The notes below the pieces were generated by a model. It searched no databases, was not told where the DNA came from, and saw only the letters and a program-made list of their open reading frames with translations. A DNA stretch of 54,515 bases, the filler included, from Bipalium vagum (Eukaryota), in the NCBI GenBank assembly GCA_037834085.1. It is 3 parts of 3 records of this genome, joined end to end, with 100 filler letters (N's around TTAATTAATTAA, not from the genome) between each part and the next. Parts side by side here need not be neighbours in the genome. Positions count along the whole stretch, not along the records: positions 1 to 18,716 come from JBBMKC010021736.1; 2 more parts are not named here. One strand, given 5' to 3'. The translations under genes and the position numbers were made by a program. Below, one piece after another: positions 273-18,716 of the stretch (position 1 is the stretch's first letter; each line of letters opens with the position of its first letter).

Positions 273-1289
273 GTATGTTAAATTAACTTTTAATACAGTA
301 AATAGAAACTAAATCGGAAATAATACAGGAAATAATTAAGAAAATTCTGACACTATCTTAATTTCTGCTTGATTTATAAGAGAAAGGAATATTGCTTCTT
401 TTTTATTTTATATATACATTATAATCTACTTTCGGCATAAATCGAAATAATTGACTTGATATATTAAAAATATGGGACTGTGTTCCATTTTGAATGTTAT
501 TATAACGGCGTTACTAAAAGCTATCCAAACTTTATTTAATATTTAATGAAAAATTTTTTTTTTCTTTAATTAATTATGATATAATCAGAACGAATATAGG
601 GAAAAATCAAATAATAAAAAAATATTTAAGGTAATTTTTATAAGTGGTTATTATTTGAAGTTTATGATTAGTTCTATGATATTATTTGTCATTAATATGT
701 ATTTTTTCAATTATGTTTGATAAAGTTTGAGATTTTTATTTTCGTTTTTCTTAATTTTTATAATTTTGAAAACTTATTAATCAAGTAAAAAACGAGTGTC
801 ATGAAATTTAAAATTTGAGAATCTTTCTTTTCTTTAAGAGAAAGTAAAGAAAATAATAAATCAACTACCTATGATAACATTGAGCTACATATCCTTTGAA
901 TAGATTGTCGCAAATAAAAAGAAATTCGGTATATCGTACTTATTTCTATTATGATTTGTCTTAGGCATCTCAAAAAGTTTTAAATTATTATTTTTCATTC
1001 CTTTCATAATGTCAAAATAATAAAAAACACTCTATCCATAGGGCAAGCAATGGATAATAATTTCACAAATGTTTATATTCAAGGCCAAAAATTAATTCAC
1101 GTGAACTTTCATTAACTTCAAAATGTTAATAATTTTACGATTTATAAAACGAGCACTGACAAAATATTTGGTTGTGCAATAGGTTCTGCATTATTTTTAT
1201 CAATATTAAAAGACGAATTTCTAATACATAAATCTTTATTTTATTCACAAAAACATTGATCGTTTTTTTCGATTCCAACACTATTCCCA

Positions 1290-2040
1290 GGTTCATAAAA
1301 ACTTTAGGACTTTTCTGTAAAAAAATTTTCACACTCCTTGGCATCCTCAATTGAATGAAGTTTTTGTTTGTCCAGGTTACTTTAAAGTGATCAGAATAGA
1401 TGGAAATCCGAATGAGCGAGTACGATAGGTGCTGCAATGCTTCCAAACTGAGGTCTTTTATTTTGTATTTGGCTGTCAAAGCAATGTGTGATTTAGCGTT
1501 AAGCTGGTGAAAGACAACATTATATCTGGTCACTAATTCCCGTCAATCAAAATCCTGATCATAATACCTCTCCGTATTGATAGTAGGCCACTTAGAAGCA
1601 ACTCATAATAAATAATCTTCTTTCAATCCCACCAAATGCATAACATAATCAACTTGGGATGAAAATCTGATTTTGCAGCTGCTTGCGATGAATTACATGT
1701 ACGCACCCTGACCACCGACGCCTAATGTTGTTGTAAGCAACCAGTTTTTCGATCCCAATTATAATGCACCACAACATAGGTTCTATCTATTCAATTTTTC
1801 CACAGTGATCCGATCAGAAATTTTCTTTTGGGTCGATTCGTGAGGGACCTGCATATCCATCTTTTTGGTCATTCTTAGATTTTTTAAAATTCTTCGTAAT
1901 TGTGTAATATTTACTACCCACGTTCTGCACTATTTCTCGTGTTGAGATATGCCGACCTGCTTTGATTGTGGCAAAGATTTCGTTGTTATTAATGAATAGA
2001 TAGCGATCTTTTTGGATACTATCTTGAAGGCTGAAAATTC
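1290..2040 (-). mobile_element. Degenerate mariner (DD34D-type) transposase relic in the P2X intron
   Basis: Fragments RYNVVFHQLNAKSHIA...LEALQHLSYS (cf. VVFHHDNARPH...EVLPHPPYSPDL), MLCIWW..IIYYELL and an HTH region (ISTREIVQNVG). Contains stops and frameshifts; ends approximate. Confidence 0.75.
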
Positions 2041-2492
2041 CAGAACTGAAATGCGCAAATTCAAGAATCACTGACAATTCTCAACCTTATTTATTAAAAA
2101 AATATCTCAGAAATCAGATAAAATTCTGTATTTATGAAATAAGCCAATATATATTTATATTTGAAAAATATAAATTTTTTTGTTTTAGTATAATTATTTG
2201 TCATTTAATTATATTTTTTATTTATATTTATATTTATATTTAATTAATAATCCAGTTTTATTTAAATGGGAATTTTTTAAAACAAATGATCGTAAATATA
2301 ATTTCACATCTAAAAATGAACTTTTATAAACAAAGCAACGGGAATATTTTGTTTTATCCTAATACCAACACTGGCCTGAAACCTTTTTAAAATTTATTGA
2401 CCTGTATGGGTTTTAATTGAAAACGAGATTATGAAATATGAAATGAAAATTTTTGATAAATTTTTGATAAATAAATAAAAATATTAATATTA

Positions 2493-3863
2493 TCTGGTGG
2501 CTGAGAATAAATGGGACACTTTAAAAACGTCGAATAATAAATGAATAAATTTAAGAACACCCAAATAAAAATATATACCGATAAACAACATGAGTATATA
2601 TTATAATATTTAAGTATTATACTATAAATACTATTTTATAATTAAAATATATTATATTATAATTATTATAATATAATATAATATAATATTTATTAAAGTT
2701 AAAAAATTAATCAACTAAATATTTTCTTCATTTCGTCGTAATCTAAAACATCTTTTAGTCCATGAGTTCACACTGCACTTACAGCATCTTGTCTAATTTT
2801 TTTGAATCTTTTCAAAATTTCTTGTTTAGGTGTGTTTTTGTTTAAATTTTTTTTCAAATCCATATTCCAACACAGTTCGGTCCAAATTGAATAATATAAC
2901 GGGCTTAAATCAGGACAGCTTGGAGGCCATTTATCAGAAGGAATAAAGGAATTAAAATGGGTTTTACACAATCTTGTGTACGTTTTGCTGTATGAGCAGT
3001 ACAGCCATCTTGTTGAAACATTCAATTATCCCCCATCTATTTTTTACCTTCTTTGAGTGCTACTGGTAATAAATTCTCAATATAAGTATTACAATTTACT
3101 TTTCCCTCTAGGAATACAACTTTTTGGTTCCATTGTAACATGCACTCATTCATATCATTAAATTAGAAGAAAATTTAAGTTTTTGATGACTGTTTTGTAA
3201 ATCAGCTTCAGATCTAGTTGTAGCTCATATTCTTGTGCTTTGTGAATTGTAAAAGCCATTGATAGTAAACTTTTTTTCATCAGAAAATAGAATTTTTCAT
3301 TCTTAAAAATACTTATTTGCACCAAATTCACAAAACTAATTCACTAATAACTAAACAAATAAAGTATTGACCGTTTGCAATACGATTTAAACTAAAAATC
3401 TTCTTTCAAAAGAACGTTGTACAGTATTTCTATGCACATCTAGCTTTTGGACAATTACTTTGTTCTCACATTTTTCTGTTTCAACAGTCTCCTCACGCTT
3501 TTTATTACTTCTTTTGTCCTTGATGTTTATTTTCTACCTATAGGAGATTTGAATATTAACTTACCCTGCTTATTGAATCTTGTGATCCACCGTTGCAATG
3601 TGGACTTTGAAACATAACCCCTTAAATGGTTTGATATTTCTCATAAACTCTTACTTTCTTCTGCAAGGTTCTATGCCAAATCTTGAATACCAATAGATTT
3701 CATTAAATAATAGTATTTTGAAAGGCTGATAATAATATTACTATTGAGTATTTGTTAAGGTCATTGTTAATAAGATTTACCAAAACAAAATTGTAAAAAT
3801 AGATTTCAGAAAATACAGCAAAAAATAATTAATCAAGTGTCCCATTTATTTTGAGCCACCCAA
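2493..3863 (-). mobile_element. Full-span decayed Tc1/mariner element (maT/DD37D-like) with both TIRs and TA flanks
   Basis: TIRs 2493-2521 and 3835-3863 match at 25/29 as an inverted pair, with TA on both sides. Transposase remnants: ILFSDEKKF, FQQDG.TAHTAK, FIPSDKWPPSCPDLSPL. Confidence 0.88.
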
Positions 3864-4248: not shown

Positions 4249-7085
4249 TAATTTGCAATGAAAAAATATTCCTACATTTATATATTTTGTTGTTTTTACT
4301 TTAATTAAAAAGTACTGTTGATTTTTGGATATATAATCCAGTCTTTTTGTTTGGCAAACTATTGGAAAATAATTTTTATAAATTATATAAATTGATAGTC
4401 GCTAATTAGTTTATGGTGTAATCTAAATTTAGTAATCAACTCTAATTATGTATATGAATTTTAATAAATAAATAATCTCTATATCCAATTTGTTTTAATA
4501 TATTGATTTTTTTTCAACAATTCTGCTTATTTATCGAATTTTGAGTTGGCCGGTTAATTGAAACCAATAACAGAGTCTTAGGGGAATGATAGGGGATCAA
4601 ATTTGATCATATCGGTATAAAAATTAAATTATTTAAACCTTAGGCAGTAAATTAGTATTTATTTCTAATTTTGTTTGTCAGTTATGAGTGTTAGGGGCAA
4701 AAAATATGAGATTGGTTTTGTTAATATTGTAAGATTTATTATCTTCTACAATCAATTATTAACATTAGTTAACTGAATTAAAACAAAATCGAAGTGTGGT
4801 GTAAGTTAATCTTTTTTTAAAAATTATTTTTTTGACGAATTTCCAAATATATTTACTGACCTATTTTAATTGTTTCCTCACCTCTCTGTAGAGGTAAATG
4901 AAAAACAGTTTGTCCAAAAATATTTTTTGTCACAATTCACAAACTCTTACAATCTTTATTTTAAGTCTTTTCTTATTATTTATGGTTTTAATATAATCAT
5001 CTTGATTCCTGATATTCGGAAGAGGGTCTGTGTCATAAAAAATGCATACCTGTAACACAAGGTTAACCTGTACTGAATTGAGAATATATATATATATATA
5101 CATATATAAAGAAAAATAAGAAGTAGTAAAGTGTTCACGAAGAATTTATTATAGTCACCAGAAAAATATTTATTTAGTTATTATCTAATTTGGATTTCAA
5201 GAAATGGAAAAAATAACATTCCAAAAAATAACCAAAGTGTATTCTTTGAAGATAAAATTCTCTATTACCAGTTGTAAGAATGTGATTAAAATTAATCCAT
5301 TACATTTAATGTTTTATATAAGTATAATATAAATAACCCTTTAATTAAAGTTTTTAATGAAGTTTTAAAAGTTAAAAATTCTTTTAAGTTTACAAATATA
5401 TTAAATATATATAAATAAATAATATATATAATTAAACACATTATTTTTTAAAAGAAAATTATTAAAACAATTTTGTGGTAAAATAAACCAATATAAATAA
5501 AATGGATAAAACGCGTTCAGCATCCAATTTTACCCATATTATTTTTCAAATCTTTAGACTTAGGTTGAATATCGCTTGTTTTTATCTACTTTATCAAGAC
5601 TAATATTTTCATAATTTTACATTTTTATAAGTACCAAAAATAGTTCCAATTTAGACCCTAACAAAATGTAATTAAATTTGTTTAGTACCAGATAATAAAA
5701 AAATATATTAGTCATAATAATAATAATAATAATAAAATATTGTTATAATAATAAAATTAATTTAATAAATTTTTTAATGTGGAGACTCCAACATTAGTCA
5801 AAACAAAAATACTGGACTAAAACATTGAACAATATTTAATTATTTTCATTATTTTCATTTATGTAAATTAATAAACATTTTTAGTTGCATATGTATTATT
5901 TATCACCAGTCATTACATAATATAAAAGAAAACTCCAAATAAATATTAGTAATAAAAATAATAAAAATTAGTCTTTCTAATTCTCTTATCAAAAATATTA
6001 TTATACCTGTAAATAAATACAATATAAAAAATAAAATTATTATCATTGTTATTGTTAGAAATAGTATTATCTTTGTAATTAGATAAAATATAAAAATTAA
6101 TAGAAATATTGTTATATTATTGTTAGAAATAATATATAAACAGTTAAAAATAAATTATTGTGTAAATACGAGGAGTCACCATAATATTTAATGAGTCATA
6201 AATTTATTTCGCTGATTGTTTTACCTCTCAAAAAACAATGTTTGAAGAGGACTCGAAATTTGTAATTTTCCATTTTCATATTGATAATTGTTATTGACAA
6301 CTTTGAAATGTGATATAATTAAAACAATTTTATGTATTTATCTGAAATTTCGGATTTTACATTTTTAATGTCTAAATTGTTTATAAACAACGTTTAAAAT
6401 CACTAGTGCTAATTTTTTTATTTTTCTCGGACTTATTGAACCGCCCTTGTATAAAAAATAACATACTTTTACTACATGTAGAAAATAAGTACAAAAAGGA
6501 AATTTAGAAAATAATGACAAATACAAAAATAATAAATTAAAATAAATAGGGACTAATATTAAGAAATGTAATATTTCTAACTTTAGAAATTAATATTAAA
6601 TTATTAGTATATAAAGCAATAAAAAATTATAAAATCAAACCTTAATCATCAGTAATTCGAGAACATCACGATTTGATTTTTAAACAATATTCGAAAATCA
6701 TCCAATAATAAGTCGTCTACATTTGTATAAAAACGAATATTGGAATCGATACCAAAAATCAAACAAATATTATATTCTATTTCGACAAGGTGATTTATCA
6801 CATAGTGGAGTTCATTTTATGCTTAGAATATTTTAAGTTAGTTTTGTTGCATAATTATTCCTTTTATTCATTCCAGTTATAAATTCGTAAATGAAAATTA
6901 TTAGTAATTGTGAAACATTAATATGGGGCTTGTTTTAGTAACTAAAACAAAATAATGAATCCTATTAATTAATTATTATTCTTTGATTATTATGGATTTA
7001 AAAACAGTGTGAATCATCACTGATTCGTTTAAATTATATATTTTTAAATTTTACTTCCGCTAAATAAATATCAGGAACACTAGGA

Positions 7086-8173
7086 TCAAATGAAGTTCCA
7101 TCCCAGCTTATCATAGATTTTTTTTGGTAAATCTATGAACCGACTAAGGTAATGACCGGATTGTTTCTTCAAGAATCTTTGAATCTAAGAGCGAGAAAAT
7201 TTCTATTTTTAATTAATAGGATTTTTAAATAATTTGAGTTTTTCCTTAAATGAAGAACGATAACAAATTTTATTGGAATCAATAAAAATTTGGTCTTAAG
7301 TTGTAAAATCTTTTAAAACTCTGTAATTGTGATAAAAATTAAATATATTTGTTTAAAATATTTATGGTAATTTTCTCATCTGTCTAACTTCTTATTGAAA
7401 ACATTTACCGTTAGGACTTTGTTTAATATTTTTAGGTCTTAAAAATAATATTAATAACTGAATAATATTTTTTACCACAATCAAAGCCTCAACGTTGATA
7501 GCCTGGAAGGGCCTAAATTCATTAATTCTACCCGACAAGAACTTTCACAATTTTCTTTTATGTACTAACGGACTTTTAAATTAATTTTTAATCAATTTTC
7601 GATACCTCTTCTTCACGTTGGCAGCTGACGCTGCCTGAAAGATTTTTTTGATTGCACTCATGTGAGCCAATATTGGAAAGTAGACTTTCATGTCTGATAG
7701 TATGTATGAAATTGTTCACTTTGTTCTCAAAAGTAATGTCTTTAGCTTGGTTAGACAGTGAACGTAAAAGATAAAAATGTTTTGTCTGCTGACTTCGACG
7801 GTGTTGAAGAACATCTATAATGAGCAATTAGAGATAGGTTTCTCGGTGGCTTATCCTTTCTTTTCTGTTTTATAATGTTGAAATGACTTTGAGATCAGAA
7901 ATCATAAGAGTTTTCAACCTAAGAACGGAGACTAGTCAACTTATTAAATACAAAACAGTAATCATTAAAAGTTAAAGAAAAGTTCAGTTGATTTTAAATT
8001 TTTATTGGTAATTTATACAATGGTAAGCGTGTCGTTTATTTTGCAGGAATCACTTGGTCAATCAGATGAACCAAGAACATCACATACATTTTGATAAGAA
8101 AAAATCAATAATATGTCAATAATTTTATAAAAAATCATAACCAGCTTGGAGTCACAGGTTCCACATCGTTCAT
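7086..8173 (-). CDS. Six-exon small uncharacterised gene (about 107 aa); exons 8173-8142, 7918-7888, 7814-7720, 7634-7606, 7512-7476, 7184-7086
   Basis: All introns are GT-AG. Phases agree at four of five junctions. Product: MNDVEPVTPSWLKTLMISDLK / (D)VLQHRRSQQTKHFYLLRSLSNQAKDITFENKAASAANVKKRPFQAINVEALIVIQRFLKKQSGHYLSRFIDLPKKIYDKLGWNFI-stop. The exon 2/3 junction is one base short. Confidence 0.62.
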
Positions 8174-8795
8174 CAACCACCGTGGTTATTTTTCTATACT
8201 AGAATTAGAATACTTCAGATTACGTCTTCGAACATGAAAACGAAAATTATTTTTGTTTCTTTGATGTTTTAAATGAAAAAATGATTTCATTTTTAAAATT
8301 TTCTACAATGAATCAGGTTAAAAATTAAAATATAAAATTACAGAAAATAATTGTGAATTTAGATATAGATATTAGTAAAAATTGGATTAATAACTAAATG
8401 TAAAATACTCAAGGATAAGAGTAAAAAACCTTAATATATGTCTTATACAGTAAATTTAAAATTATCAATTTATTAAGATTAAAGTAAATTGTATCTTCAA
8501 ATTTTTTATTTTAATACTTTTCTTAATAACAAAATAAATTAACTAAATTATATGACTGTATCAAAGCATAGAATATATATTTTAAAAACGTATCTAAAAA
8601 TCATAAAATTAAAAATACCAATGACAGTTAAGCCATTGTTTTTTTTGAATATTTTTTTTAATTAAATTAATCATCCTATAATCAACTCTTGCTCTTGTTT
8701 TATCAAAATATTGTGTTTATTTTTTCAAATAGTGTAATTTCAATTTCTTTGTAATTAATTTTATTAATTATTATTAATTAGATTGATAAATTTTA

Positions 8796-8847
8796 ATGTC
8801 TTTTGAAAAAAATGATTTAAGGATAGTAAATATTCAATTTGAAACCG
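8796..8847 (+). CDS. akna: AKNA-like gene, first coding exon
   Basis: ATG at 8796, MSFEKNDLRIVNIQFET, phase-1 donor |gtcagt, 54-nt intron to the acceptor at 8901. Confidence 0.6.
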
Positions 8848-8901
8848 GTCAGTTTATAAATTTGAACAGATAAATATTAAGAAGATAAATATGTTTTTCA
8901 G

Positions 8902-9059
8902 ATGATATGATTGAATCACGAAATAATTCACGTAATTCTATGAATGATGAGTTGCTAAGTCATTATTCTTATACTGATTCTGACCTGCATGATTTTCAAA
9001 AATTGGAAAAAGATATTTATGGTTCACATGGAGATGATGAATCGTCTCAAGATCACGAT
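8902..9059 (+). CDS. akna: AKNA-like gene, exon 2
   Basis: ttttcag| ... |gtatgt; acidic/Ser-rich DMIESRNNSRNSMNDELL...DHD; followed by a 58-nt intron. Confidence 0.75.
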
Positions 9060-9117
9060 GTATGTTTTTTATTAGTAATGTATAATCATAATATATAATC
9101 ATTTAAATATTTCTCAG

Positions 9118-9306
9118 ATGATGCAGGAATTTCTGGAGGACGTGACTGATGAGCAGACAGAATCTCTGGACTTTGTACGTCCCCACGTTCCAGTCAGACC
9201 TTCGTTAGGAAATCCAATTGATACTTATGATCAATTGCAAATGCATTACGAACCTCTAAAGCATTCTGAGAATAGTAAAAAGTCTACCTTGAATCACAAT
9301 TACAAA
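9118..9306 (+). CDS. akna: AKNA-like gene, exon 3
   Basis: ttctcag| ... |gtatgg, phase 0/0; MMQEFLEDVTDEQ...NHNYK. Confidence 0.75.
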
Positions 9307-12300
9307 GTATGGTCTTTCAATCTTTTCTGAAAAAAAATTAATATTAAAATATCATAATTGTTTTAAAAATTAACTCCATTTGATTATGTTATTGATTTTT
9401 TGAGAATTTAAAGTACGGATATTTTATATAAGTGTCTCTTAGATTTTGTTTATTTCCCCGTGTAAGAACTCATTATTGCTTTTTTTGATAAATATTTATT
9501 TATTAAACATGTGGATATTGATTTTGTTGATCTAACGAAGTTGTGTCCAAAGTATTATTACGGACATATTACGGAAATTAATAACTCGTTATGAGCCCCT
9601 CATCCACAGATATCATGTAGTTTATTTAGGAATGATCAAATTTGCAAAGTTATTTGTGGGGTAACGGAATAAAGGTTTTAAATAAGAGCCACAGCAGTAC
9701 TGTACCAAAAAACATCAAAGAGATGAATGAATAACAAAGAATAAGTAGATGTCGGTAAGATCGTGAATGTGAGATATGACACTGCTTCATATTATGAATA
9801 ACGGAACTGTAATCCGATGTTCGTTTCAAATTTAAGCAATGTTGGACTGAAGATGCTCATTTGTTCGTAGCTCTTGTTACCATCTCTAATAGAGAATGTT
9901 TGGTAAAATATTTGTGAATGAAATTTTTGATAGCTGCTAATTGTTTTTTGAGACCAGTCGGGCACTAAAAATCAGACCCGGGCCGCACTTTGGTCACTCC
10001 AGGTCTGATATCTATTGAAGATTGTTTTTATTTCTATATTAGTTTAAGACTAATGATAATCGGCCCGATGTGTTTTGAAACAATTGAAAAGTGATGTCAT
10101 CAGTCCGTTCTCGGTGGCACAGTGCGTGTGACCATCTCTGTGTTTTGTTTTGTTAGGATTAGTTTCATAATTCATTTGAATTATAGGTTTTTTTGTTCTC
10201 TTTTATCAGAGTATTTCGACCGACCTTTATTTTGTAAAGAAATCGAAGAAATCAATTATATTTCTTAGAATATGTGATATCTCAAATATAATTTTCACCA
10301 AAAGAAGTTGACTTCAATCTGACGCTATTTGACTAATAATTTCGCCTGAACATCTTTCACTGTTGTGACCTTCAGATCACAAAAACACCAATTCTCTTTG
10401 AAATTAGTAATTCTCTCTAGTGGCACTGAAATATTTCATCAAAATGTCACTTAGAAAATCCCAAAACCGTTTTCACATACCAATTTATTCTGAATCATAG
10501 ATTATCACTCACCGTGGTCGAATCAGCTCGTTCAACTATTTTCAAGAACTGGTCTCAGTCTTACCAATTTCCAGGAAATATTCTTTTTTAGACAAACTGT
10601 TTGTCTCTGGTAAATTATTTCAGCAATTTTGTCCACTGATCTCTCACATTGATAATTTCTCCAATCAGTCGTTATCGATTTTTATTTGTTTCTCTATGCA
10701 ATTTTTCTTTCAATCATTTTCTGTGGATTCTTTTTTTCAACCAATCTAAATAAGTTTGGAAATAAAAAATTATTATTAATTAATTAATCAAAAAATGATA
10801 TTTATTAAATGGTTTTCTTTTCCCACGAATGACTTTTATTGGTACTTAGAAAGAAGACGTCTGCACTTTATCTCGAAATTATTTTCTTTCTATTTTATAC
10901 ATATTCCAAGTTTAATTATTTCTTTTCAATATTTCAAAGGATATATCTTTGTCAAATCTGTGATATTTTGGTTTTGATAAAAAATTAATAATAGTTTGTT
11001 CTTATTCCGATTAGCAAAACTCTAATTATAATTGGGAGAATTTCTTTTTCAGCATTATTCATTTCATATAAATTTTCCCTTTTTTGAAATGAAATCGTTA
11101 TATTAATTTTACTTATGTAATTTTATTGATTTTCTTCAAAAATTGTTAATTTTTCTGGAATAATTAGTAAAATTCTATTATTTATGAAAAATCAATTAAA
11201 TATCAAATCAATAATAAAATCATTCCAGTTTATTAAAAAAAATTAATTACAAACCTGTTCGAAAAGAAAATTTTTTTCTAAATTTTTTATTTTTTAAAGT
11301 TTTTATGACTGAGTCTGTAGGAATTGGAATATCTCACTTTAGATTTATATTTAATGAAAAAAAAAGAAAAAATTGAAAGAAAAAACGATTCTTGAAGTCC
11401 GTCATAAATTTCGTTTAAAAATCATACTTCATTGTAACCAATTTAATGAGAATATTTCACCGTGGTTTCAACTTTTTAATTTCGAAAAATAATGTCAATG
11501 AAATTTTAGAAAATAGAACACATATATTATATGCATTTCTGTTTTGATAAGTGTTAACGTAGCATTAATACGCAACGACTTTGTTTTGTTATTCCATGAC
11601 TCCAGAAGTTGCTAAGCGTTGTCAAGTGAAATGCTTATTGAGATTTTCTGAATTCTGGTGGCCTTTTAAGGTAAAACTGGTTGTGTCTACCTTTGATTAA
11701 AGTCTTTTGTTTTTATTTTAGTAGACGTTCATAACCGAATAATTAAGTTTAATTGGCATTTGGTTCTCAAATTTTCTAATAATGTAGAGAGCTGCATCTT
11801 TTTTTTTATTAATATTGTTCTATTCTTTTAATCTTTTGATAAATTTTAATTTTTTTGTACCCCAAAAACCATGATCAAAAATTCAAATTGAAATTACCAA
11901 TAGTTTTATAAAAAAATACAGATAGAAATGAAAATATTTTTATCAAAATAGTATTAATTACAATTTAAAATTTAATAAAAAAATATCAGAAATATTTTTT
12001 TAAAAAATTTTATTTCAACATTTTCAAATGTAATAAACTTTTAAAATTATTATTATTATTATAATATCATCTTGCCACGAGAATATTATACTGTCAAGTT
12101 CTTGATAGCTGTTTACATAAATTAAATCCATAAAATTAAGTTCAAGAAGAACATGAAGTATACCGGAATTTTAATTTTAATTCAACATGTCAGTTCATTG
12201 GTTATTTAATTTCTACAGAATAGTATTTTTAGATAATATTTTATTATTATTTTAATATCAGAACGAATCTTATTATTTTTCAACTAAAATTAACCGTATC

Positions 12301-12917
12301 GAACTAATAATAAGTCATCCTGTTTGTAATGCATTACTTTCTATGTAATACAACTTATTCATGTTTTCAAGCTTTATTTAGACATCGAAGAGCATAAATC
12401 ATTGGAAATTTAGTTATCTTTGACAATATGAGAAAAAGTGATATAAAAAAACGTTTTTGGCAGTTGAACACTTTAAGTCTCAATAAAATTATTAAATATT
12501 TGAAAGTTAAAAATTAGTTTTAATGGTTTTTTTAAGTATTGAATAATCAATTATGCCTTGGTTCGTTATTATTACATGAAATTTCGGAAGTCAATTATTT
12601 CCCAATTTATTTAGCTGCTGCGGAAAAAATTCAAGTTTTCATAAATTGAAATTCTTCCCAGTTGAGGGAAACTGTCAATATAATTAAATAAATAAATACT
12701 AAACATTTTTGCACAAATTGTTTAGGTTTTTGTGTATTTATTATTTTGTGTGTTAAATAGAAAACGTTGGTTCAAGTGTAGAATTCATGTTATATTATTA
12801 TTTCATTGGCATCGCTATTCTTACATAATCTTAAAACTGGGAAAACTTAATTGATTAAAATCCAAGACATGCTTTAAATTCATTTTTGTACACGTATCAT
12901 TTTTTCCGATCTATTAG

Positions 12918-13468
12918 AAGAGCGCAAAATTGAATCACAGCCCAATGTCTCCTACTTTTAAATCAAGAGGGAGCTCTCAAGCTAGTGGGGGGTCAGCAGA
13001 GACTGTACTTTCTCAGAGCCAACAAATGGATGAAGTTCCGTCAATTAAAAAAATATCCGATAAATTATCCAAGTCCCGTAATATGGTCAGCTCCGTAAGC
13101 TCTACGGAAAGTGCAGCTAAACAATCGAAAAAACGAATCACCAACAGAGCAACTTTGAGAACATTGTTAGATCAAGAGAAAGCCACCAGAAAGTCTCAAG
13201 AAACCTATATTGAACATCTTCAACAATCTCTTCATCAATTATTATCTCAACATGCGCTGGCTAAAGAAACAATAGATCAACTGAGGCTGGGTATTGCACT
13301 GAATATTGAGGAAAATCATAATCGTCCTAAATTACGGCGCCATCATCACCAGAAGCAGCCGACTACTAACAGTAACAGTCAGATTTTATCTCGACGATTT
13401 AGCAGTATTGTCGATGGAGCTGATATGGGGGATTATATGGAAAAGATGAACAATATTTCTCGGGCAAA
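12918..13468 (+). CDS. akna: AKNA-like gene, exon 4, containing the AKNA domain
   Basis: ctattag| ... |gtaaga, phase 0/2. YIEHLQQSLHQLLSQHALAKETIDQLRLGIALN resembles the AKNA/AKNAD1 signature LIxQLQEDYHRLLTKYAEAENTIDQLRLGAKVN (recalled, not searched). Confidence 0.82.
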
Positions 13469-16400
13469 GTAAGATTTTGTATTGTTAAATAAAAATTGAA
13501 TATAATTGTGAAAAAGATCGAAAATTTTTAAAGTCAAATTTATCAAGAATCGATATTTTATAATATTGATATTTATTGTTTAAAGCATTTGTCATTTATT
13601 CTTTTTCTCTGCTTTTTTTTGGTCTTGTGTATTCTTGTTATCATTCTAGGTCCAAAGTTTGAGACTTGCAAACCTTTTCCTGTTAATTTCATAAGTTGGA
13701 GACTTTTATTAAGTACTTGTGAAATAATATTTTCAACTTTAATTGGTTTTATTATTTCATAAAATTTATGATTATTTGAAATTAAATTAAATTTTCAAAA
13801 TTTAATTAAAAGTAAACTATTTAAGCCAATCTAAAATAATACCGTTAATTAAAATTAAAATTTGGTGAAATCGATTATTAAGTATTTTATGTGAAAAATA
13901 TATAAATTAATTGACATTTTAAAATTATTGAAAAGTTTAAAAAATAAAATAAAATTCATTTAGGGAAATTAAATTGAATATTTTTATCGTTAAAATCTGT
14001 TGTACAAATATTTTATTGATTTCGTTAAATAATTATCAAGATATTTGGAATCGAAAATATAATAAAATAAATTAAGAAAAAATATAAACATTAATTTTTT
14101 CATTAGATATTTACTCGCACTTATCAATTTTTATATCTAGTTTATTTTTTTCATTCATAGTTATGTAGTGAATTAATTAATTAATCAAATCAAATTATTT
14201 CTTAATCATTTTTAATATATATTTATATTCATTTTCAATTTGTTATTGATTTGGCAAATAAGTAATTGCGTATTTTTATAACGTTATGTTTAGAGAGTTT
14301 AATACGTTTAAAAATCATTTTTTTAATAAATATTTTTTATATTTATTTAAACTGATGATAAAGATGGAAATGGTGATCGAGCATAATTGATAAAATTTTA
14401 GTTAATAAAAGTTTTTATTCTTTCTCATATTTATCTTTTGTTTTATTTACAATAATCCACAATTACTTAGTTGCAAACCCAAAAATTCTCGCTTAACATT
14501 TTCACTTTGGTTACTTATTTAACTGTGTAAAAGCTTGAGTATATGAAAACAAGATAAGATTTTTTTGTGGTTTGTATTTAAGGAAAAAAAATCCAAATGC
14601 TTTATTTACAAATAAATCAATTTACAGTTATTTTGACATGAAAATAGGTAGAAATTAAACCGAGAATTATTTTAATATTTTATAATTACATTTTTGTCTT
14701 TCTTTTGTGTTGATTTTAAATTTTTATATTTTTAAAAAATTCTTTATTTATGTTCACGATTTTTATGTAATGTAATGTTTAACAAAACCTTTTTAAATAG
14801 ATTTAGAATTAAAACACTAATTTTATTAAAAACTGTTTTAAAATGTTAAAGATTCAGTTGTATTTTCTACTTTTAGTAGATATTCCAATTTTCGATTTTT
14901 CCTTTGACTTATTATATTTTTTCTATGTGGTAACTCTTGCATCTTTAGTTTTTTTAAAGGTTCTTTTGAAATCGTAGAACCGGCTATTAAAAAAGCATTT
15001 TTCAGCTTTGTGTAAGTAATTGAGAAAGTTATGAGTGATCTAAACCATATCTATATCTTTTATTATTTTAATATTCAATTTATTAATTTTATTAATTGTG
15101 CTTAATATTTTTCTGTCAAGTACTTGTTTATATTTGTTTCTAACAATACGATTATTCAGTTTCAAATGAAATAATGATTTATTTATTATTATCAATTACA
15201 ATTTGTGCTAAACTTTGTCAAATATAGAAAGGATTTTTATAAAAATTATGTTAATAATTATATTTTTTTCAAATAAAAATTATCATTATTTGTTAAAATA
15301 TCTCTTAGAATTTTGTCTTGAGATAATTAAGTAAAATTAAAATTATTAATACTAGATTTAGCTGTAGTGAAATTTCAGTCTAAACGTTGCTATGTCTAAT
15401 AAATAATTTTTTACCATGTTCTAAATAGAATATTTATTACGACTATTTAAACTGTTTACTTTATATAATTCATTAATCATTATTACTACTTTAAATGACC
15501 TGCGTAATGGTCATTGGTTTTTTCGTGGAAATTGATAAATTATACAGCATAATATATGTCGTTATTATTATCATTTTAATAATTTTCTAGATAAATATTT
15601 TAATAATTATGTCTGCTATAATATCACTGATAGTTAATGTCTAAATTGCTTTTTAACTAATAAAAAAATTGTTTAAATGGACTATTTATTTTCTTGTTAA
15701 ACTTCAGAAAGTTATATGTTCCATGCAGTGATAATAATTAAAATGTTAATTTTCTTTTTATTAAAAACATTTCAGAGCAATATTTTTAACAAAAATATTT
15801 TTGATCCGATATGAGTTAGAGAAAAGTTAATGTTTTTTCTTTTGTTTGAAATTAATATATATTTTTACAAAATAATTTTCATATTTTATGATAGAATTTA
15901 AATGGTGCACAATAAACTTGTAATGCATCTCGCTCATTATTGGGGTTTCTATTGATTTGTAAATTACATACAAGATCAAGATACCTATCTATAATTGATT
16001 ATGTAACGACCTTCTTTATTAATTTGTATTGGTTCTTTTATTACTTCTCTTCTGAATCAAATTTTAAAAATATTGTTAAAGATTATCGATTCATTTTTGT
16101 TTTACTAAATATATAATCTTTTTATAACAATAATTTGATAAAGTAAAAATGTGATCTTGATGATTTCGAAAATATATATGTTATTCTTTTATTTGGAAAT
16201 GCGTAAACATTATAGATTATAGATAGATTAAATCATAAGCCTTTCTTTAATTTGATGGACATAGAAATTATAAAAGAATTTTTAAAAAAATTGATTTAAC
16301 TGATGCTTTTATAAGTTTTATAATTATAAAAGTCTAGAAATTTTGACGCTCCATGAAGTCACTCCCGTTTATAGGTATGTGTTTTGGGTAGAAAAAAAGT

Positions 16401-16769
16401 CAGTTAAATCAAAATAGATGATGAAAGGGTCTGCAATCTTATTAAATCTCTAAAAGGATATTAGAATTATCATAATATTTAATTAATATTGACCGGAATG
16501 TTAAGAATTTCATTGAACTCTGAAATTCTTGTCAGTGTCAGCAAAGTTATTATCAAAACAAAATAGTGATCTTTATTAAATCAGTTTATAAGTGTCAAGT
16601 CAATTAATTTTTTCCATTGTTTAACGTCAGTTAATTTTATTCAAATGTAACTGAAACAATTTCTATATTAATTGGACAATTGAACTTGATTTTTCTGTTT
16701 TTTCTTATTTATTTTATTATATTATATAGAATTTAAACCTGTGTGGAAATAAAATTATAAAAATAATCT

Positions 16770-17190
16770 TGGTCGAAGTATTTTTCATTTGAGAAAAACC
16801 AAATGATCTTGTTTTGCTGGATGTGTAAGTTTTGTTAGGATCATTTTCGCTTTAATTAAACAATTTTTTCTGATATTTCTTGAGAAATTGTCCTTTCTTC
16901 AACACACACTCCCAAGTTTTTATGGACATCATTTATGATTGTTTCCTCTGAGATCTTGAAATTTTTGGCAAGCCTGAGGTTGCCATCAACAATCTACTTA
17001 ATTTCTTTGATAAAATCATTTGTTCTCATGTCACAGCGTTTGGAATTTTTCTTAAGCTTTGTTCTCTTTGACACTGTTTCACTATCAGATAGAAGCTCTT
17101 GGTATACTTGTATGTAAAATGATTGTACAGCTTTTAAAAATCGATCGATTTCTAAATCGGAATAATCAGGTTTCAAAAGCACTAGAATAT
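16770..17190 (-). mobile_element. 5' fragment of a maT (DD37D, Bmmar1-like) transposase in the AKNA-like intron
   Basis: KKNSKRCDMRTNDFIKEIK.IVDG...ISEETIINDVH...VLKKGQF is similar to the element at 22.2 kb. Confidence 0.65.
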
Positions 17191-17405
17191 CATTTTTATA
17201 AATTTATAAAACATATTTTTATTTATTTTTATTCAGTCATTTTTAATGATTACATTACAAATATCATTTATTTATAATATTAATGATGAAAAAAATTAAA
17301 AATTTTCTTTCCCAACTTTTAAAAATTATTTATTATTTTCTTCTTTCGCAACTAATCAAAAAAATATTAATAACATTTCTTTACAAAAGCACTATTTGAT
17401 TCTAG

Positions 17406-17479
17406 ATCTGTGGACATGAATATGTTTGACGAAGAATCTCCAAATGAGATAATTGGACCACATCAGGCGAATAACGAAT
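17406..17479 (+). CDS. akna: AKNA-like gene, exon 5
   Basis: ttctag| ... |gttagt, phase 2/1, which bridges exons 4 and 6 exactly; SVDMNMFDEESPNEIIGPHQANNE. Confidence 0.75.
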
Positions 17480-17591
17480 GTTAGTCTTTTTTGTCTTATA
17501 ACTCTTTGGTCATCACTGAGAAAATTATAAAATAATCTTTACTCCTTTAATGAAAAATAAATAGTTACCAACGTTAATTGAAACTTTTCAG

Positions 17592-17915
17592 ATGGTGGGT
17601 CTTTGAAATATGTGAAAAAAGGACAATCTTCAATTAATCAAGGTTTATCAAAAGAAATTGCAAACGATTTTCAGCTCAATTTTGATAAATTTCAAACTCG
17701 AGTGGAAATAATTGAACAAGCTATAGAAGAGTTGAACATGTATATCGATGGAGGAGCTTCCGGTTCTTCAGGCTCACAGTATGGGGATTTGGATGGATCC
17801 AACGATCGTCATCAAACTGACACGGAAAATCGATTGCAAAATATTCTGCTGGCTTATGAAAACCTACAGAAAGATTTCAGTCAAGTTTGTCGGGTTTGGA
17901 AAGATACAGCTAAAA
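17592..17915 (+). CDS. akna: AKNA-like gene, exon 6 (second conserved helical block); the gene probably continues
   Basis: ttttcag| ... |gtaaaa, phase 1/1. RLQNILLAYENLQKDFSQVCR parallels vertebrate AKNA FQRLKAAHAALEEEYLKACR as recalled. Confidence 0.75.
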
Positions 17916-18716
17916 GTAAAATAATTGATTGGATTCGAAATTATTGATTATTTTACTTAATATTTTATGCATGAATATTTTTCTTTTCAATTATACAATG
18001 TTACCCACCCTTTGTTCAACATTGTTGAATGATGTCTTACAATCAATAACTTCAAAAACCACTATTTATCTATAATAATTATTATTCTGAATTGATTTCT
18101 GTCAGTGTTAAAAAAATTAAATGTAAAAAATCTCTTCAAATTTTATTATAATAATTAATAAAAAATTATAATTATAATAATAATTTTTTTCAATAAATTA
18201 TTATTCGTCCAACGTTAAATATGACAATATTTATTATACAGAGCCTTCAATAAGATATTTGGATGTAATCTTTAATTCCCAATGATGTTGTGACACCTTT
18301 CACTAAATATCAGATTTTAAGGATGAGGTATTTGTTACTCTTTCACAATATGTAGAATTAATTCAAAGAATAAAGGAAATCTTCTGTAATTTGTGCTCCG
18401 GTTGTGATTTCTTTTTGGCTTTAATTAATGATTTGTATTGTTTTACGTGATTTTGGATATTTATGAATATTGTTTCGTGTTCTTTTCTCATTAGATGGAC
18501 AATGAAACCGTCGAAAGCCAAATGTTGAGTTTTGATCTTACTTTTTTCTCTTTTTATTTGATACTTTGCAATATTAAAAATTTTTTAACAGTTTATTTAA
18601 TAATTAATTTTTTGGTTAATTTTTTTATTTATATTGCTTATAATAATAAATCAACAATATAATTATATTGAGCTGTTCGGAAAGTCACTTCGCTTTATAC
18701 CTATCTTTAAATATAT

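What the first reader, a model, noticed from the sequence alone, without database searches (positions are those of the whole stretch)
8796..17915. AKNA-like centriolar/microtubule-organising gene in an apparently planarian genome
Seen: six phase-consistent exons encode a long low-complexity N-terminus plus two helical blocks (…HALAKETIDQLRLG… and …LQNILLAYENLQKDFSQVCR…) in the same order as in vertebrate AKNA/AKNAD1. Established: mammalian AKNA sits at mother-centriole subdistal appendages and organises centrosomal microtubules, and planarians lack centrosomes, building centrioles only in ciliated cells. Inference: if the host is a planarian, a retained AKNA implies a centrosome-independent role (basal foot of multiciliated cells, junctional or acentrosomal microtubule organisation). 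I know of no invertebrate functional study. Best candidate for new biology here.
Basis: partly seen in the sequence, partly recalled or inferred. Interest (0 to 1): 0.75.

Follow-up and report, generated by a model that had tools for sequence, protein, structure and literature searches.

The report
Flatworm AKNA-family gene, front half
This stretch holds the first five coding exons of a flatworm relative of AKNA, the mammalian protein that tethers microtubule-nucleating complexes to centriole appendages; it is an ordinary member of that family, and it gives a way to test what AKNA does in animals that lack centrosomes.

Summary
Window 8907-17915 (+) carries five GT-AG, phase-consistent coding exons (430 codons), not six.

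Main evidence:
- A profile of exon 12918-13468 and two close relatives, searched against 1.84 billion proteins, found 24 further proteins.
- 17 of the 19 I looked up are named. Twelve are flatworm. The others include Ciona "AT-hook-containing transcription factor" (AKNA) and a hemichordate protein with Pfam AKNA above cut-off.
- The shared element is a gapless block of about 45 residues ending TIDQLRLG. It is also present in mammalian AKNA: 38% identity over 56 residues, E=4e-9.
- A profile of 12 named family proteins, searched back against this genome, hits this exon best (E=3.8e-17). It also hits a second contig, C257401, which carries the later family blocks.
- Eight gene pieces on the two contigs match the family in colinear order.

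The gene is therefore cut by the contig end. Pfam's own AKNA model finds nothing in the window because that domain is divergent and split between exon 17592-17915 and C257401.

A basal-foot or acentrosomal microtubule role is inferred, not tested. No RNA data were available. This is a new member of a known kind, of moderate interest.

The parts
8907..9059 (+). Coding exon 1, starting at the likely start ATG. Carries the family N-terminal motif (SDLHDFQKLEKD, block 1).
   Evidence: Donor GTATGT at 9060. Weak colinear match to family columns 19-37 (hhalign P=0.023; hmm 14-40). BLASTP to residues 13-37 of trematode proteins gives E 0.03-0.05. An AG at 8900-8901 allows an upstream 5'UTR exon, not shown.
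9118..9306 (+). Coding exon 2, with the flatworm-only motif GNPIDTYDQL (block 2).
   Evidence: AG/GT and phase 0-0. 70% identical to P0001 residues 1-33. Family columns 216-241, P=0.003. The motif is in 8 of 8 flatworm and 0 of 10 other family proteins.
12918..13468 (+). Coding exon 3, the main conserved exon (block 3).
   Evidence: Family profile A4 against the own genome: best hit, E=3.8e-17. hhalign probability 97.8%, P=8e-13. Single copy in G000.
13161..13292 (+). Core motif of about 45 residues, TLLDQEKATRKSQETYIEHLQQSLHQLLSQHALAKETIDQLRLG. It has no Pfam model.
   Evidence: Gapless alignment across 25 hits from flatworms to a tunicate. Present in mammalian AKNA at about 421-476. Identical but for one residue in the three planarian-like sequences.
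17406..17479 (+). Coding exon 4, a short linker exon.
   Evidence: AG/GTTAGT, phase 2 to 1. Its first residues (SVDMNMFDE) match the end of P0001 (SVDTDMFDE).
17592..17915 (+). Coding exon 5. It carries family block 4 (about 17651-17734) and block 5, the first helix of the Pfam AKNA domain (about 17816-17899). It ends at a donor, not at the TGA at 17945.
   Evidence: hhalign to family columns 533-596, P=1.3e-3, with 0 of 60 shuffles reaching the score. hmm 480-512 and 516-548 match weakly. 85% identical to P0003 up to the donor. Pfam gives no AKNA hit.
17916..18716 (+). Start of the next intron, up to the contig end. It includes an unsupported open frame at 18314-18434 and a dispersed repeat at about 18650-18716, where the assembly breaks.
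   Evidence: The open frame matches the family only over 6 columns, and out of order. The last 50-100 bases match at least 39 other contigs. The next family blocks are on C257401.
9307..12917 (+). Intron 2 (3.6 kb).
   Evidence: GC 0.26. No family match in any frame.
13469..17405 (+). Intron 3 (3.9 kb).
   Evidence: GC 0.21. No family match in any frame.

Best explanation
The window holds the 5' half (five coding exons, about 430 codons) of a single-copy flatworm member of the AKNA family ('microtubule organization protein AKNA').

Most likely the gene continues on contig C257401 (minus strand). That contig carries the second half of the AKNA domain, the YxxLMxRYNxLK block and a C-terminal block. 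The full protein would be roughly 1,100-1,200 residues, which is a rough estimate from open frames.

Shown: family membership, exon structure and colinearity.

Inferred from mammalian AKNA, about 40% likely in detail: the protein sits through its C-terminal part on the basal foot or subdistal-type appendages of basal bodies in multiciliated and sensory cells, and there tethers gamma-tubulin ring complexes and anchors apical microtubules. It would thus be a centriole-appendage job that needs no centrosome. The invariant 45-residue TIDQLRLG helix is the best candidate for the partner-binding module.
For: Forward search. The profile of exon 3 plus two close relatives gave 26 proteins at E<=1e-3 among 1.84 billion.
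- 19 of the 24 non-self hits were looked up and 17 carry names.
- Twelve are flatworm: cestodes, trematodes and a monogenean. One of them is Taenia 'AKNA domain-containing protein'.
- The other five are a crinoid, Ciona 'AKNA domain-containing' (cluster mate 'AT-hook-containing transcription factor'), a bivalve, a hemichordate and a nemertean.

Link to named AKNA.
- Pfam AKNA lies 127-165 residues after the block in deuterostome and spiralian members, and about 287 residues after it in trematodes.
- The hemichordate region containing both elements retrieves 12 vertebrate proteins, 10 of them named AKNA or AT-hook transcription factor.
- Exon 3 against hyena AKNA: 38% identity over 56 residues, E=4e-9.

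Reverse search. A profile of 12 named proteins hits this exon best in the genome (E=3.8e-17). It also hits C257401 at E=6.4e-10 and E=0.028.

Colinearity.
- All 9 hits at E<10 among 1302 six-frame pieces of both contigs are on the gene strand and in family order.
- 8 of 13 tested pieces are placed colinearly by hhalign.
- A deuterostome-only AKNA-domain profile hits the C257401 exon at E=2.1e-9.
- The exon 5 end and the C257401 exon start are both phase 1.

Function leads from passages read.
- AKNA recruits gamma-TuRC to subdistal appendages.
- AKNA sits at the basal-foot tip of human airway multiciliated cells.
- Planarian multiciliated cells have basal feet but no centrosomes.
- The C-terminal 324 residues are needed for centrosome targeting, and truncating variants are linked to a ciliary-dyskinesia-like picture.
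Against: - Pfam PF12443 gives no hit on any window exon, on the C257401 exons taken singly, or at this locus in a whole-genome scan.
- Exon 5's match to blocks 4-5 is weak: probability 18-39%, HMMER E 1.7-5. Column shuffling is a lenient control for helical sequence.
- The planarian-only profile reaches mammalian AKNA at only 19-24 bits, which is not significant library-wide. Homology to vertebrates therefore rests on intermediates and on the pairwise BLAST.
- No read or contig joins the two contigs, so 'one gene' is an inference.
- Four open frames in the middle of C257401 match nothing, and their exon chain is unresolved.
- No RNA run holds the locus. Expression in this species is unshown.
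- The block-3 tree puts the window clade on a very long branch and does not place it with the named flatworms.
- Nothing here tests localisation or binding.
Confidence: 0.8

Rival explanations
1. Two separate genes. The window gene is a short 440-residue protein ending at the TGA at 17945 (or in the 18314-18434 frame). C257401 carries the 3' part of a different AKNA-type paralogue whose 5' part is missing from this fragmented assembly.
For: - No sequence joins the contigs.
- The assembly is 440 Mb in 272,664 contigs and may be incomplete.
- An open frame does run from exon 5 to a stop at 17945.
Against: - Each family block occurs once in the genome, and the two contigs are exactly complementary: model positions up to 548 on one, from 557 on the other.
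- The phases match.
- Conservation with P0003 stops exactly at a GTAA donor.
- A stop at 17945 would cut the AKNA domain after its first helix.
Confidence: 0.12
2. Not AKNA kin. It is a lineage-specific coiled-coil protein whose helices resemble AKNA by chance or by composition.
For: - No Pfam AKNA hit.
- Coiled coils give spurious profile matches.
- The Atlas feature scores were only 0.76-0.78, in the chance range.
Against: - The alignment is gapless, 40-57% identical over 45-60 residues, with 13 invariant or near-invariant columns.
- 23 of 24 non-self hits share the same block. The 24th, P0020, is a repeat protein.
- The reverse search returns this exon as the best hit in 440 Mb.
- Eight blocks are colinear.
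Confidence: 0.03
3. The protein acts mainly as a nuclear AT-hook transcription factor, as AKNA was first described, and not at centrioles.
For: The historical annotation of AKNA and the Pfam domain name.
Against: - No (R/K)GRP AT-hook core in any of 21 family proteins examined, mammals included, nor in the gene's 12 open-frame pieces.
- Recent work places AKNA at appendages and the basal foot.
Confidence: 0.05

Closest known systems
Vertebrate AKNA (microtubule organization protein AKNA / AT-hook-containing transcription factor), e.g. P0055 from hyena, 1439 aa
   Same: - Same order of blocks: N-terminal LxEF motif, TIDQLRLG block (hyena 421-476), AKNA domain (603-697), YxxLLxRY block, DSGFxGSE block, C-terminal block.
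- Similar estimated total length if the C257401 part is included.
   Different: - Apart from block 3, similarity is visible only with profiles.
- The Pfam model does not score.
- There is an extra flatworm-only EDPIxTYD-type motif.
- The linker between block 3 and the AKNA domain is short.
- Function in this animal is untested.
Parasitic-flatworm AKNA-type proteins, e.g. Taenia asiatica A0A0R3VU28 'AKNA domain-containing protein', Mesocestoides, Echinostoma, Paragonimus, Schistosoma turkestanicum (1131-1835 aa)
   Same: - Best named hits (E 9e-8 to 1e-4).
- They share the flatworm-only block 2 and the His in K-H-A.
- Trematodes keep a detectable AKNA-domain second half (E 1e-6 to 1e-8), as does C257401.
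   Different: - The window clade sits on a very long branch (3.0 changes per column). Outside the core it is only 25-32% identical.
- All of these are unstudied, automatically named proteins.
AKNAD1 (vertebrate paralogue with an AKNA domain)
   Same: I did not fetch or test any AKNAD1 sequence.
   Different: Not examined. Invertebrate genes are presumably co-orthologous to AKNA and AKNAD1, which is inference only.

Membership tests
AKNA family (Pfam PF12443 definition) | Pfam AKNA model scores above its gathering cut-off (28.1 bits) | tested here: not met
   No AKNA hit on any window exon at E<=10, nor on single C257401 exons. The whole-genome scan gave only an 18.3-bit chance hit in a reverse-transcriptase-like fragment elsewhere. 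The domain is split between exon 5 and another contig. Also, 21 of the 24 family hits scanned lack a Pfam AKNA hit at E<=0.01, and only 1 of 24 passes the cut-off.
AKNA family | Sequence homologous to the AKNA domain (FDxxxExEGxxFQLxxxLDDL half), detected by a profile of named members | tested here: met
   A profile of 8 deuterostome AKNA-domain segments hits C257401 (rc 1021-1287) at E=2.1e-9 among 1302 pieces. hhalign gives P=2.7e-6, probability 88%. This lies outside the window. The first half, in exon 5, matches only weakly (P=1e-3).
AKNA family | Conserved TIDQLRLG-type block N-terminal of the AKNA domain, shared with named vertebrate AKNA | tested here: met
   16 of 17 proteins matched at the equivalent place; E=4e-9 against hyena AKNA.
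AKNA family | The family profile finds this locus as its best match in the organism's genome (reciprocal test) | tested here: met
   E=3.8e-17. The only other matches are the two colinear exons on C257401.
AKNA family | Colinear order of family blocks from N-terminus to C-terminus | tested here: met
   9 of 9 hits are colinear and on one strand; 8 pieces are placed at columns 19-37, 216-241, 392-455, 533-596, 605-672, 696-791, 1008-1060 and 1377-1401; 5 of 13 pieces are unplaced.
AKNA family | C-terminal region needed for centrosome or appendage targeting | tested here: inconclusive
   The C257401 piece rc 7744-8064 aligns to the family's last block at only P=0.008. The requirement for this region is taken from passages of PMC8535656.
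AKNA family | AT-hook DNA-binding motif | tested here: not met
   No (R/K)GRP core in the gene pieces. There is also none in any of 21 family proteins, mammals included, so by this simple pattern it does not define the family.
AKNA family | Localisation to subdistal appendages or the basal foot, and recruitment of gamma-TuRC | not testable with these tools
   Known only for mammals.

The most novel reading that the evidence does not exclude
In flatworms that have lost centrosomes and the CEP192 and CDK5RAP2 pathways, the retained AKNA orthologue is the main tether of gamma-tubulin complexes. It would act at the basal foot of multiciliated cells, and possibly at other acentrosomal sites.

The ancestral working part of AKNA would then not be the Pfam 'AKNA/AT-hook' domain. 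It would be the un-annotated 45-residue TIDQLRLG helix, the most conserved element from flatworms to mammals, acting as the binding site for the nucleation machinery.
Probability: 0.3. Interest if true: 0.55.

Novelty: new member of a known kind. Interest (0 to 1): 0.35.

Why it matters
In mammals, AKNA's contribution to microtubule organisation is masked by redundant centrosomal pathways. In RPE1 cells its loss removes appendage gamma-tubulin but hardly changes microtubule density. Its role at the basal foot 'still needs to be investigated'.

A planarian has abundant multiciliated cells with basal feet and easy RNAi. It has no centrosome, and centrosome loss there is correlated with loss of the SPD-2/CEP192 and centrosomin/CDK5RAP2 genes. 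That makes it a cleaner place to see what AKNA does.

The family map made here also points to a strongly conserved block with no Pfam model as the first thing to mutate. The gene's mere presence is not surprising, because databases already label a tapeworm homologue 'AKNA domain-containing'.

Tried and rejected
- **Pfam on single exons** and Pfam AKNA over the whole genome gave nothing usable. The one weak genome hit (L001) reads like a reverse-transcriptase fragment.
- **Exon 5 against family members.** BLASTP and a two-sequence HMM gave no significant match. Only profile-profile comparison placed it.
- **By-eye match rejected.** I first thought the FQL in exon 5 matched the FQLG of the AKNA domain's second half. 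hhalign and the find on C257401 showed that it matches block 4 instead.
- **Open frame 18314-18434** as a further exon: it is phase-compatible, but matches the family over only 6 columns and out of order. Left as unsupported.
- **Tree of block 3.** It does not place the window clade among flatworms. One row, the degenerate P0004, was left out, and P0020 was already absent from the alignment.
- **Species identity.** Organism names are coded. Earlier notes call the genome planarian, but I could test only the flatworm signatures.
- **Centrosome-gene check.** Cnn_1N reached at best 20.5 bits, below its cut-off, at a level where bacterial controls also ring. The positive control SAS-6_N was itself just under its cut-off, 24.3 against 25. 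This is inconclusive in a fragmented, exon-split genome.
- **Expression.** One DNA run and no RNA run hold the locus. Read laying was not used, since contigs of a DNA run cannot show expression.
- **Metagenome scan for DNA of P0001:** none found.
- **Literature.**
  - 0 papers hold both AKNA and planarian.
  - None of the listed papers (20 and 12 listed) holds AKNA together with a flatworm or spiralian term. Those lists are ranked extracts, not exhaustive.
  - An ascidian atlas names an 'AKNA+ cell' cluster without functional work.
  - The 2021 AKNA scoping review has no occurrence of ortholog, conserved, vertebrate, invertebrate or evolution.
  - Papers not held: Azimzadeh 2012 and Camargo Ortega 2019. 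What I say of them comes from citing passages.
  - Supplements were not consulted. A planarian RNAi-screen supplement could list this gene.

Full report
**What is in the window**

The piece is very AT-rich, with GC 0.19-0.34 per kb. On the + strand I find five coding exons:
- 8907-9059
- 9118-9306
- 12918-13468
- 17406-17479
- 17592-17915

Every internal junction is AG...GT. The phases chain as 0, 0, 2, 1, 1. Exon GC is 0.31-0.40, against 0.16-0.26 in the four introns.

Independent support for the splicing comes from P0001. It is a 244-residue protein fragment from a relative, open at both ends, 69% identical over exon 3. It runs straight through the 9306|12918 and 13468|17406 junctions.

I could not find a phase-compatible path from the ATG at 8796 into exon 1 (reading). 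The N-terminal family motif lies 24-36 residues after the ATG at 8907, as in trematode proteins. I therefore take 8907 as the start. An untranslated upstream exon is possible, because an AG lies at 8900-8901.

**What family it belongs to**

Pfam scans of the exon pieces gave nothing. A six-frame scan of the whole assembly with Pfam AKNA (PF12443) gave one 18.3-bit hit on another contig, and that contig reads like a reverse-transcriptase fragment.

The word-index protein search found only close, unnamed relatives: P0001 and P0002 for exon 3, and P0003 for exon 5.

I then spent the one exhaustive search on a profile of exon 3 plus P0001 and P0002 (alignment A2). It returned 26 proteins at E<=1e-3 among 1.84 billion.
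- Two are P0001 and P0002 themselves.
- Of the other 24 I looked up 19, and 17 carry names.
- Twelve are flatworm: Mesocestoides, Taenia ('AKNA domain-containing protein' in UniRef), Fasciola, Echinostoma, Heterobilharzia, Calicophoron, Opisthorchis, Schistosoma turkestanicum, Hymenolepis, Paragonimus, Spirometra and Protopolystoma.
- The other five are a crinoid, Ciona ('AKNA domain-containing protein'; its cluster mate is 'AT-hook-containing transcription factor isoform X4'), a bivalve, a hemichordate and a nemertean.
- Five hits (P0018, P0019, P0020, P0024, P0025) were not looked up.
- P0020 is a repeat protein with many spurious Pfam hits. I dropped it from the alignment.

The other 25 hits align with the window without gaps over a block of about 45 residues of the form RKQQxxYIxQLQxxYDxLLxK(H/Y)AxAExTIDQLRLG.

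Pfam AKNA scored at E<=0.01 in only 3 of the 24 hits scanned, and above its cut-off in one, the hemichordate at 33.0 bits.

**Link to vertebrate AKNA**

I used the hemichordate protein's first 260 residues, which hold both the block and the Pfam domain, for the last word-index search. It returned 19 proteins. Twelve are vertebrate, and 10 of those are named 'microtubule organization protein AKNA' or 'AT-hook(-containing) transcription factor'. A sea-urchin protein is named 'AKNA-like'.

In hyena AKNA (1439 aa) the block lies at about 421-476 and the Pfam domain at 603-697. Exon 3 aligns to the hyena block with 38% identity over 56 residues, E=4e-9 for that single comparison.

The planarian-only profile reaches 16 of the 17 proteins at the equivalent place. 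For mammals it scores only 19-24 bits, which would not be significant library-wide. The link to vertebrates therefore rests on the chain of intermediates and on the pairwise alignment.

**Family map and the second block**

An alignment of 18 named members shows about ten colinear conserved blocks:
- an N-terminal LxEFxxFE motif;
- a flatworm-only EDPIxTYD motif (8 of 8 flatworm, 0 of 10 others);
- the TIDQLRLG block;
- an LxFQ block;
- the two halves of the Pfam domain (LKxxHxxLExDYxQAKEE and FDxxxExEGExFQLGxxLxDL);
- YxxLLxRYNxLK;
- DSGFxGSExSR (17 of 18);
- ALxxEIxxLK;
- CxxCGGSG;
- a C-terminal block.

Exon 1 carries the first motif, exon 2 the second and exon 3 the third.

Exon 5 gave no significant BLASTP or HMMER match. 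Profile-profile comparison against the whole 1426-column family alignment put its best local match at columns 533-596. That is the LxFQ block plus the first helix of the Pfam domain, directly after block 3 (score 31.9, P=1e-3, probability 18-39%). None of 60 column shuffles exceeded 20.2, although shuffling is a lenient control for helical sequence.

**The gene continues on another contig**

Three observations point the same way:
- P0003 stays 85% identical to exon 5 up to '...DTAKS' and then diverges, exactly at the GTAA donor.
- The contig ends 800 bases later in a dispersed repeat with at least 39 other copies.
- A profile of 12 named family proteins (A4, no planarian sequence) gave three matches in the own genome: exon 3 (E=3.8e-17), C257401:7641-7862(-) (E=6.4e-10) and C257401:8753-8872(-) (E=0.028).

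On the reverse complement of C257401 the open frames read ...MDSTEQIEGNLFQLRMQLDDLERHVKQ... and ...LAMLEDNYRKLMERYNDLKRLSSPSRQKDIDDIV.... These are the second half of the AKNA domain and the next family block.

A profile of 8 deuterostome AKNA-domain segments hits the first of these at E=2.1e-9.

Scoring all 1302 six-frame pieces of both contigs with the family HMM gave 9 hits at E<10. All are on the gene strand and in family order, at model positions 14-40, 133-170, 242-375, 480-512 and 516-548, then 557-594, 634-706, 946-1010 and 1066-1100.

Piece-by-piece hhalign placed 8 of 13 pieces colinearly, including a C-terminal piece at columns 1377-1401 (P=0.008). Four C257401 frames and the window frame 18307-18447 were not credibly placed.

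The first C257401 exon starts after an AG in phase 1, which matches the phase-1 end of exon 5. Each block occurs once in the genome.

I conclude, at about 0.8, that this is one gene of at least 18 kb split by an assembly break. It would encode roughly 1,100-1,200 residues. That figure is a rough sum of open frames, and the middle exons are unresolved. I did not build or search a joined model.

**Host**

The flatworm-only motif in exon 2 and the His in K-H-A point to Platyhelminthes: the His is present in all 12 named flatworm rows and in the window, while every named non-flatworm row has Tyr.

A tree of block 3 puts the window, P0001 and P0002 together (100/99) on a very long branch and does not resolve their position.

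'Planarian' is plausible from the extreme AT content, which I recall as typical of triclads. Other agents' notes on this genome also say so (not tested by me).

A check for the centrosomin CM1 motif found nothing above cut-off, but the SAS-6 control was itself marginal. This says little.

**How it probably works**

Shown for mammals only, from passages I read:
- AKNA, not ninein, recruits gamma-TuRC to subdistal appendages in RPE1 cells, yet contributes little to microtubule density there (bioRxiv 10.64898/2026.08.17.745143).
- AKNA concentrates at the tip of the basal foot in human airway multiciliated cells, and its role there is untested (bioRxiv 10.1101/2025.09.04.674302).
- The C-terminal 324 residues are needed for centrosome localisation. 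Truncating variants have been linked to microcephaly and to a ciliary-dyskinesia-like picture (PMC8535656).

Planarian multiciliated cells have basal feet, and their sensory basal bodies have nine-fold blade-like appendages. Planarians lack centrosomes, correlated with loss of the SPD-2/CEP192 and centrosomin/CDK5RAP2 genes (PMC4799839).

My inference, at about 0.4: the flatworm protein is anchored by its C-terminal part on the basal foot or on these appendages, where it tethers gamma-tubulin complexes and microtubule minus ends. This would help set basal-body orientation and gliding. Retention of the family in tapeworms, flukes and a monogenean fits a job in ciliated larval stages and flame cells (recalled biology, not tested).

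**Novelty**

The family is known, and a tapeworm homologue already carries the automatic name. I found no paper holding both AKNA and planarian, and none among the listed papers that treats AKNA function in an invertebrate. An ascidian atlas only names an 'AKNA+ cell' cluster.

Two things are mildly new here:
- a family map showing that the best-conserved element is a block with no Pfam model, lying 127-290 residues before the Pfam domain;
- the observation that centrosome-less flatworms keep the whole protein.

Since AKNA is already seen at mammalian basal feet, a specialist would not be very surprised. Interest is 0.35.

Noticed in passing
G000:C257401 (L014), minus strand, about 10021 to 1955: The 3' half of the same AKNA-type gene. 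It carries the second half of the AKNA domain (contig 8746-8907), the YRKLMERYNDLK block (contig about 7530-7897), an ALxxEI-type block (about 5616-5876) and a C-terminal block ending at a stop near 1955. Four open frames in between match nothing.
   Followed up: partly
Family alignment, hyena AKNA about 914-930; C257401 rc 2497-2985: The block DSGFxGSExSR is present in 17 of 18 family proteins from tapeworms to mammals. It coincides with what a human-genetics paper calls the 'second PEST domain' (911-932). From recall, DSGxx(x)S resembles a beta-TrCP phosphodegron. The planarian frame has a similar STSGFQGATSG, seen by eye only.
   Followed up: no
window 18650-18716: The contig ends in a dispersed repeat with at least 39 other copies in the assembly, at 76-92% identity over 50-100 bases. 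This explains the assembly break inside the gene.
   Followed up: partly
window 1138-2080 and 3390-3533, minus strand: Open frames that by eye look like a decayed mariner-type transposase (FHQLNAKSH..., LDVHRNTVQR). Pfam gave no hit.
   Followed up: partly
window 7086-8200, minus strand: GC-richer stretch with open frames, e.g. 7591-7827(-), 79 aa. Pfam found nothing on the 79-aa frame.
   Followed up: no
P0004 (ENA contig of 538 nt, unnamed relative): A degenerate copy of exon 3 with deletions inside the invariant core (...EEATHETFIELQ..., the LRLG part missing). It may be a pseudogene or a divergent paralogue in a relative.
   Followed up: no
window 18314-18434 (+): An open frame with an AG before it and phase 1 (FKDEVFVTLSQYVELIQRIKEIFCNLCSGC...). 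Its CNLCSG resembles the family's CxxCGG motif, but it lies out of order. It is unsupported as an exon.
   Followed up: partly
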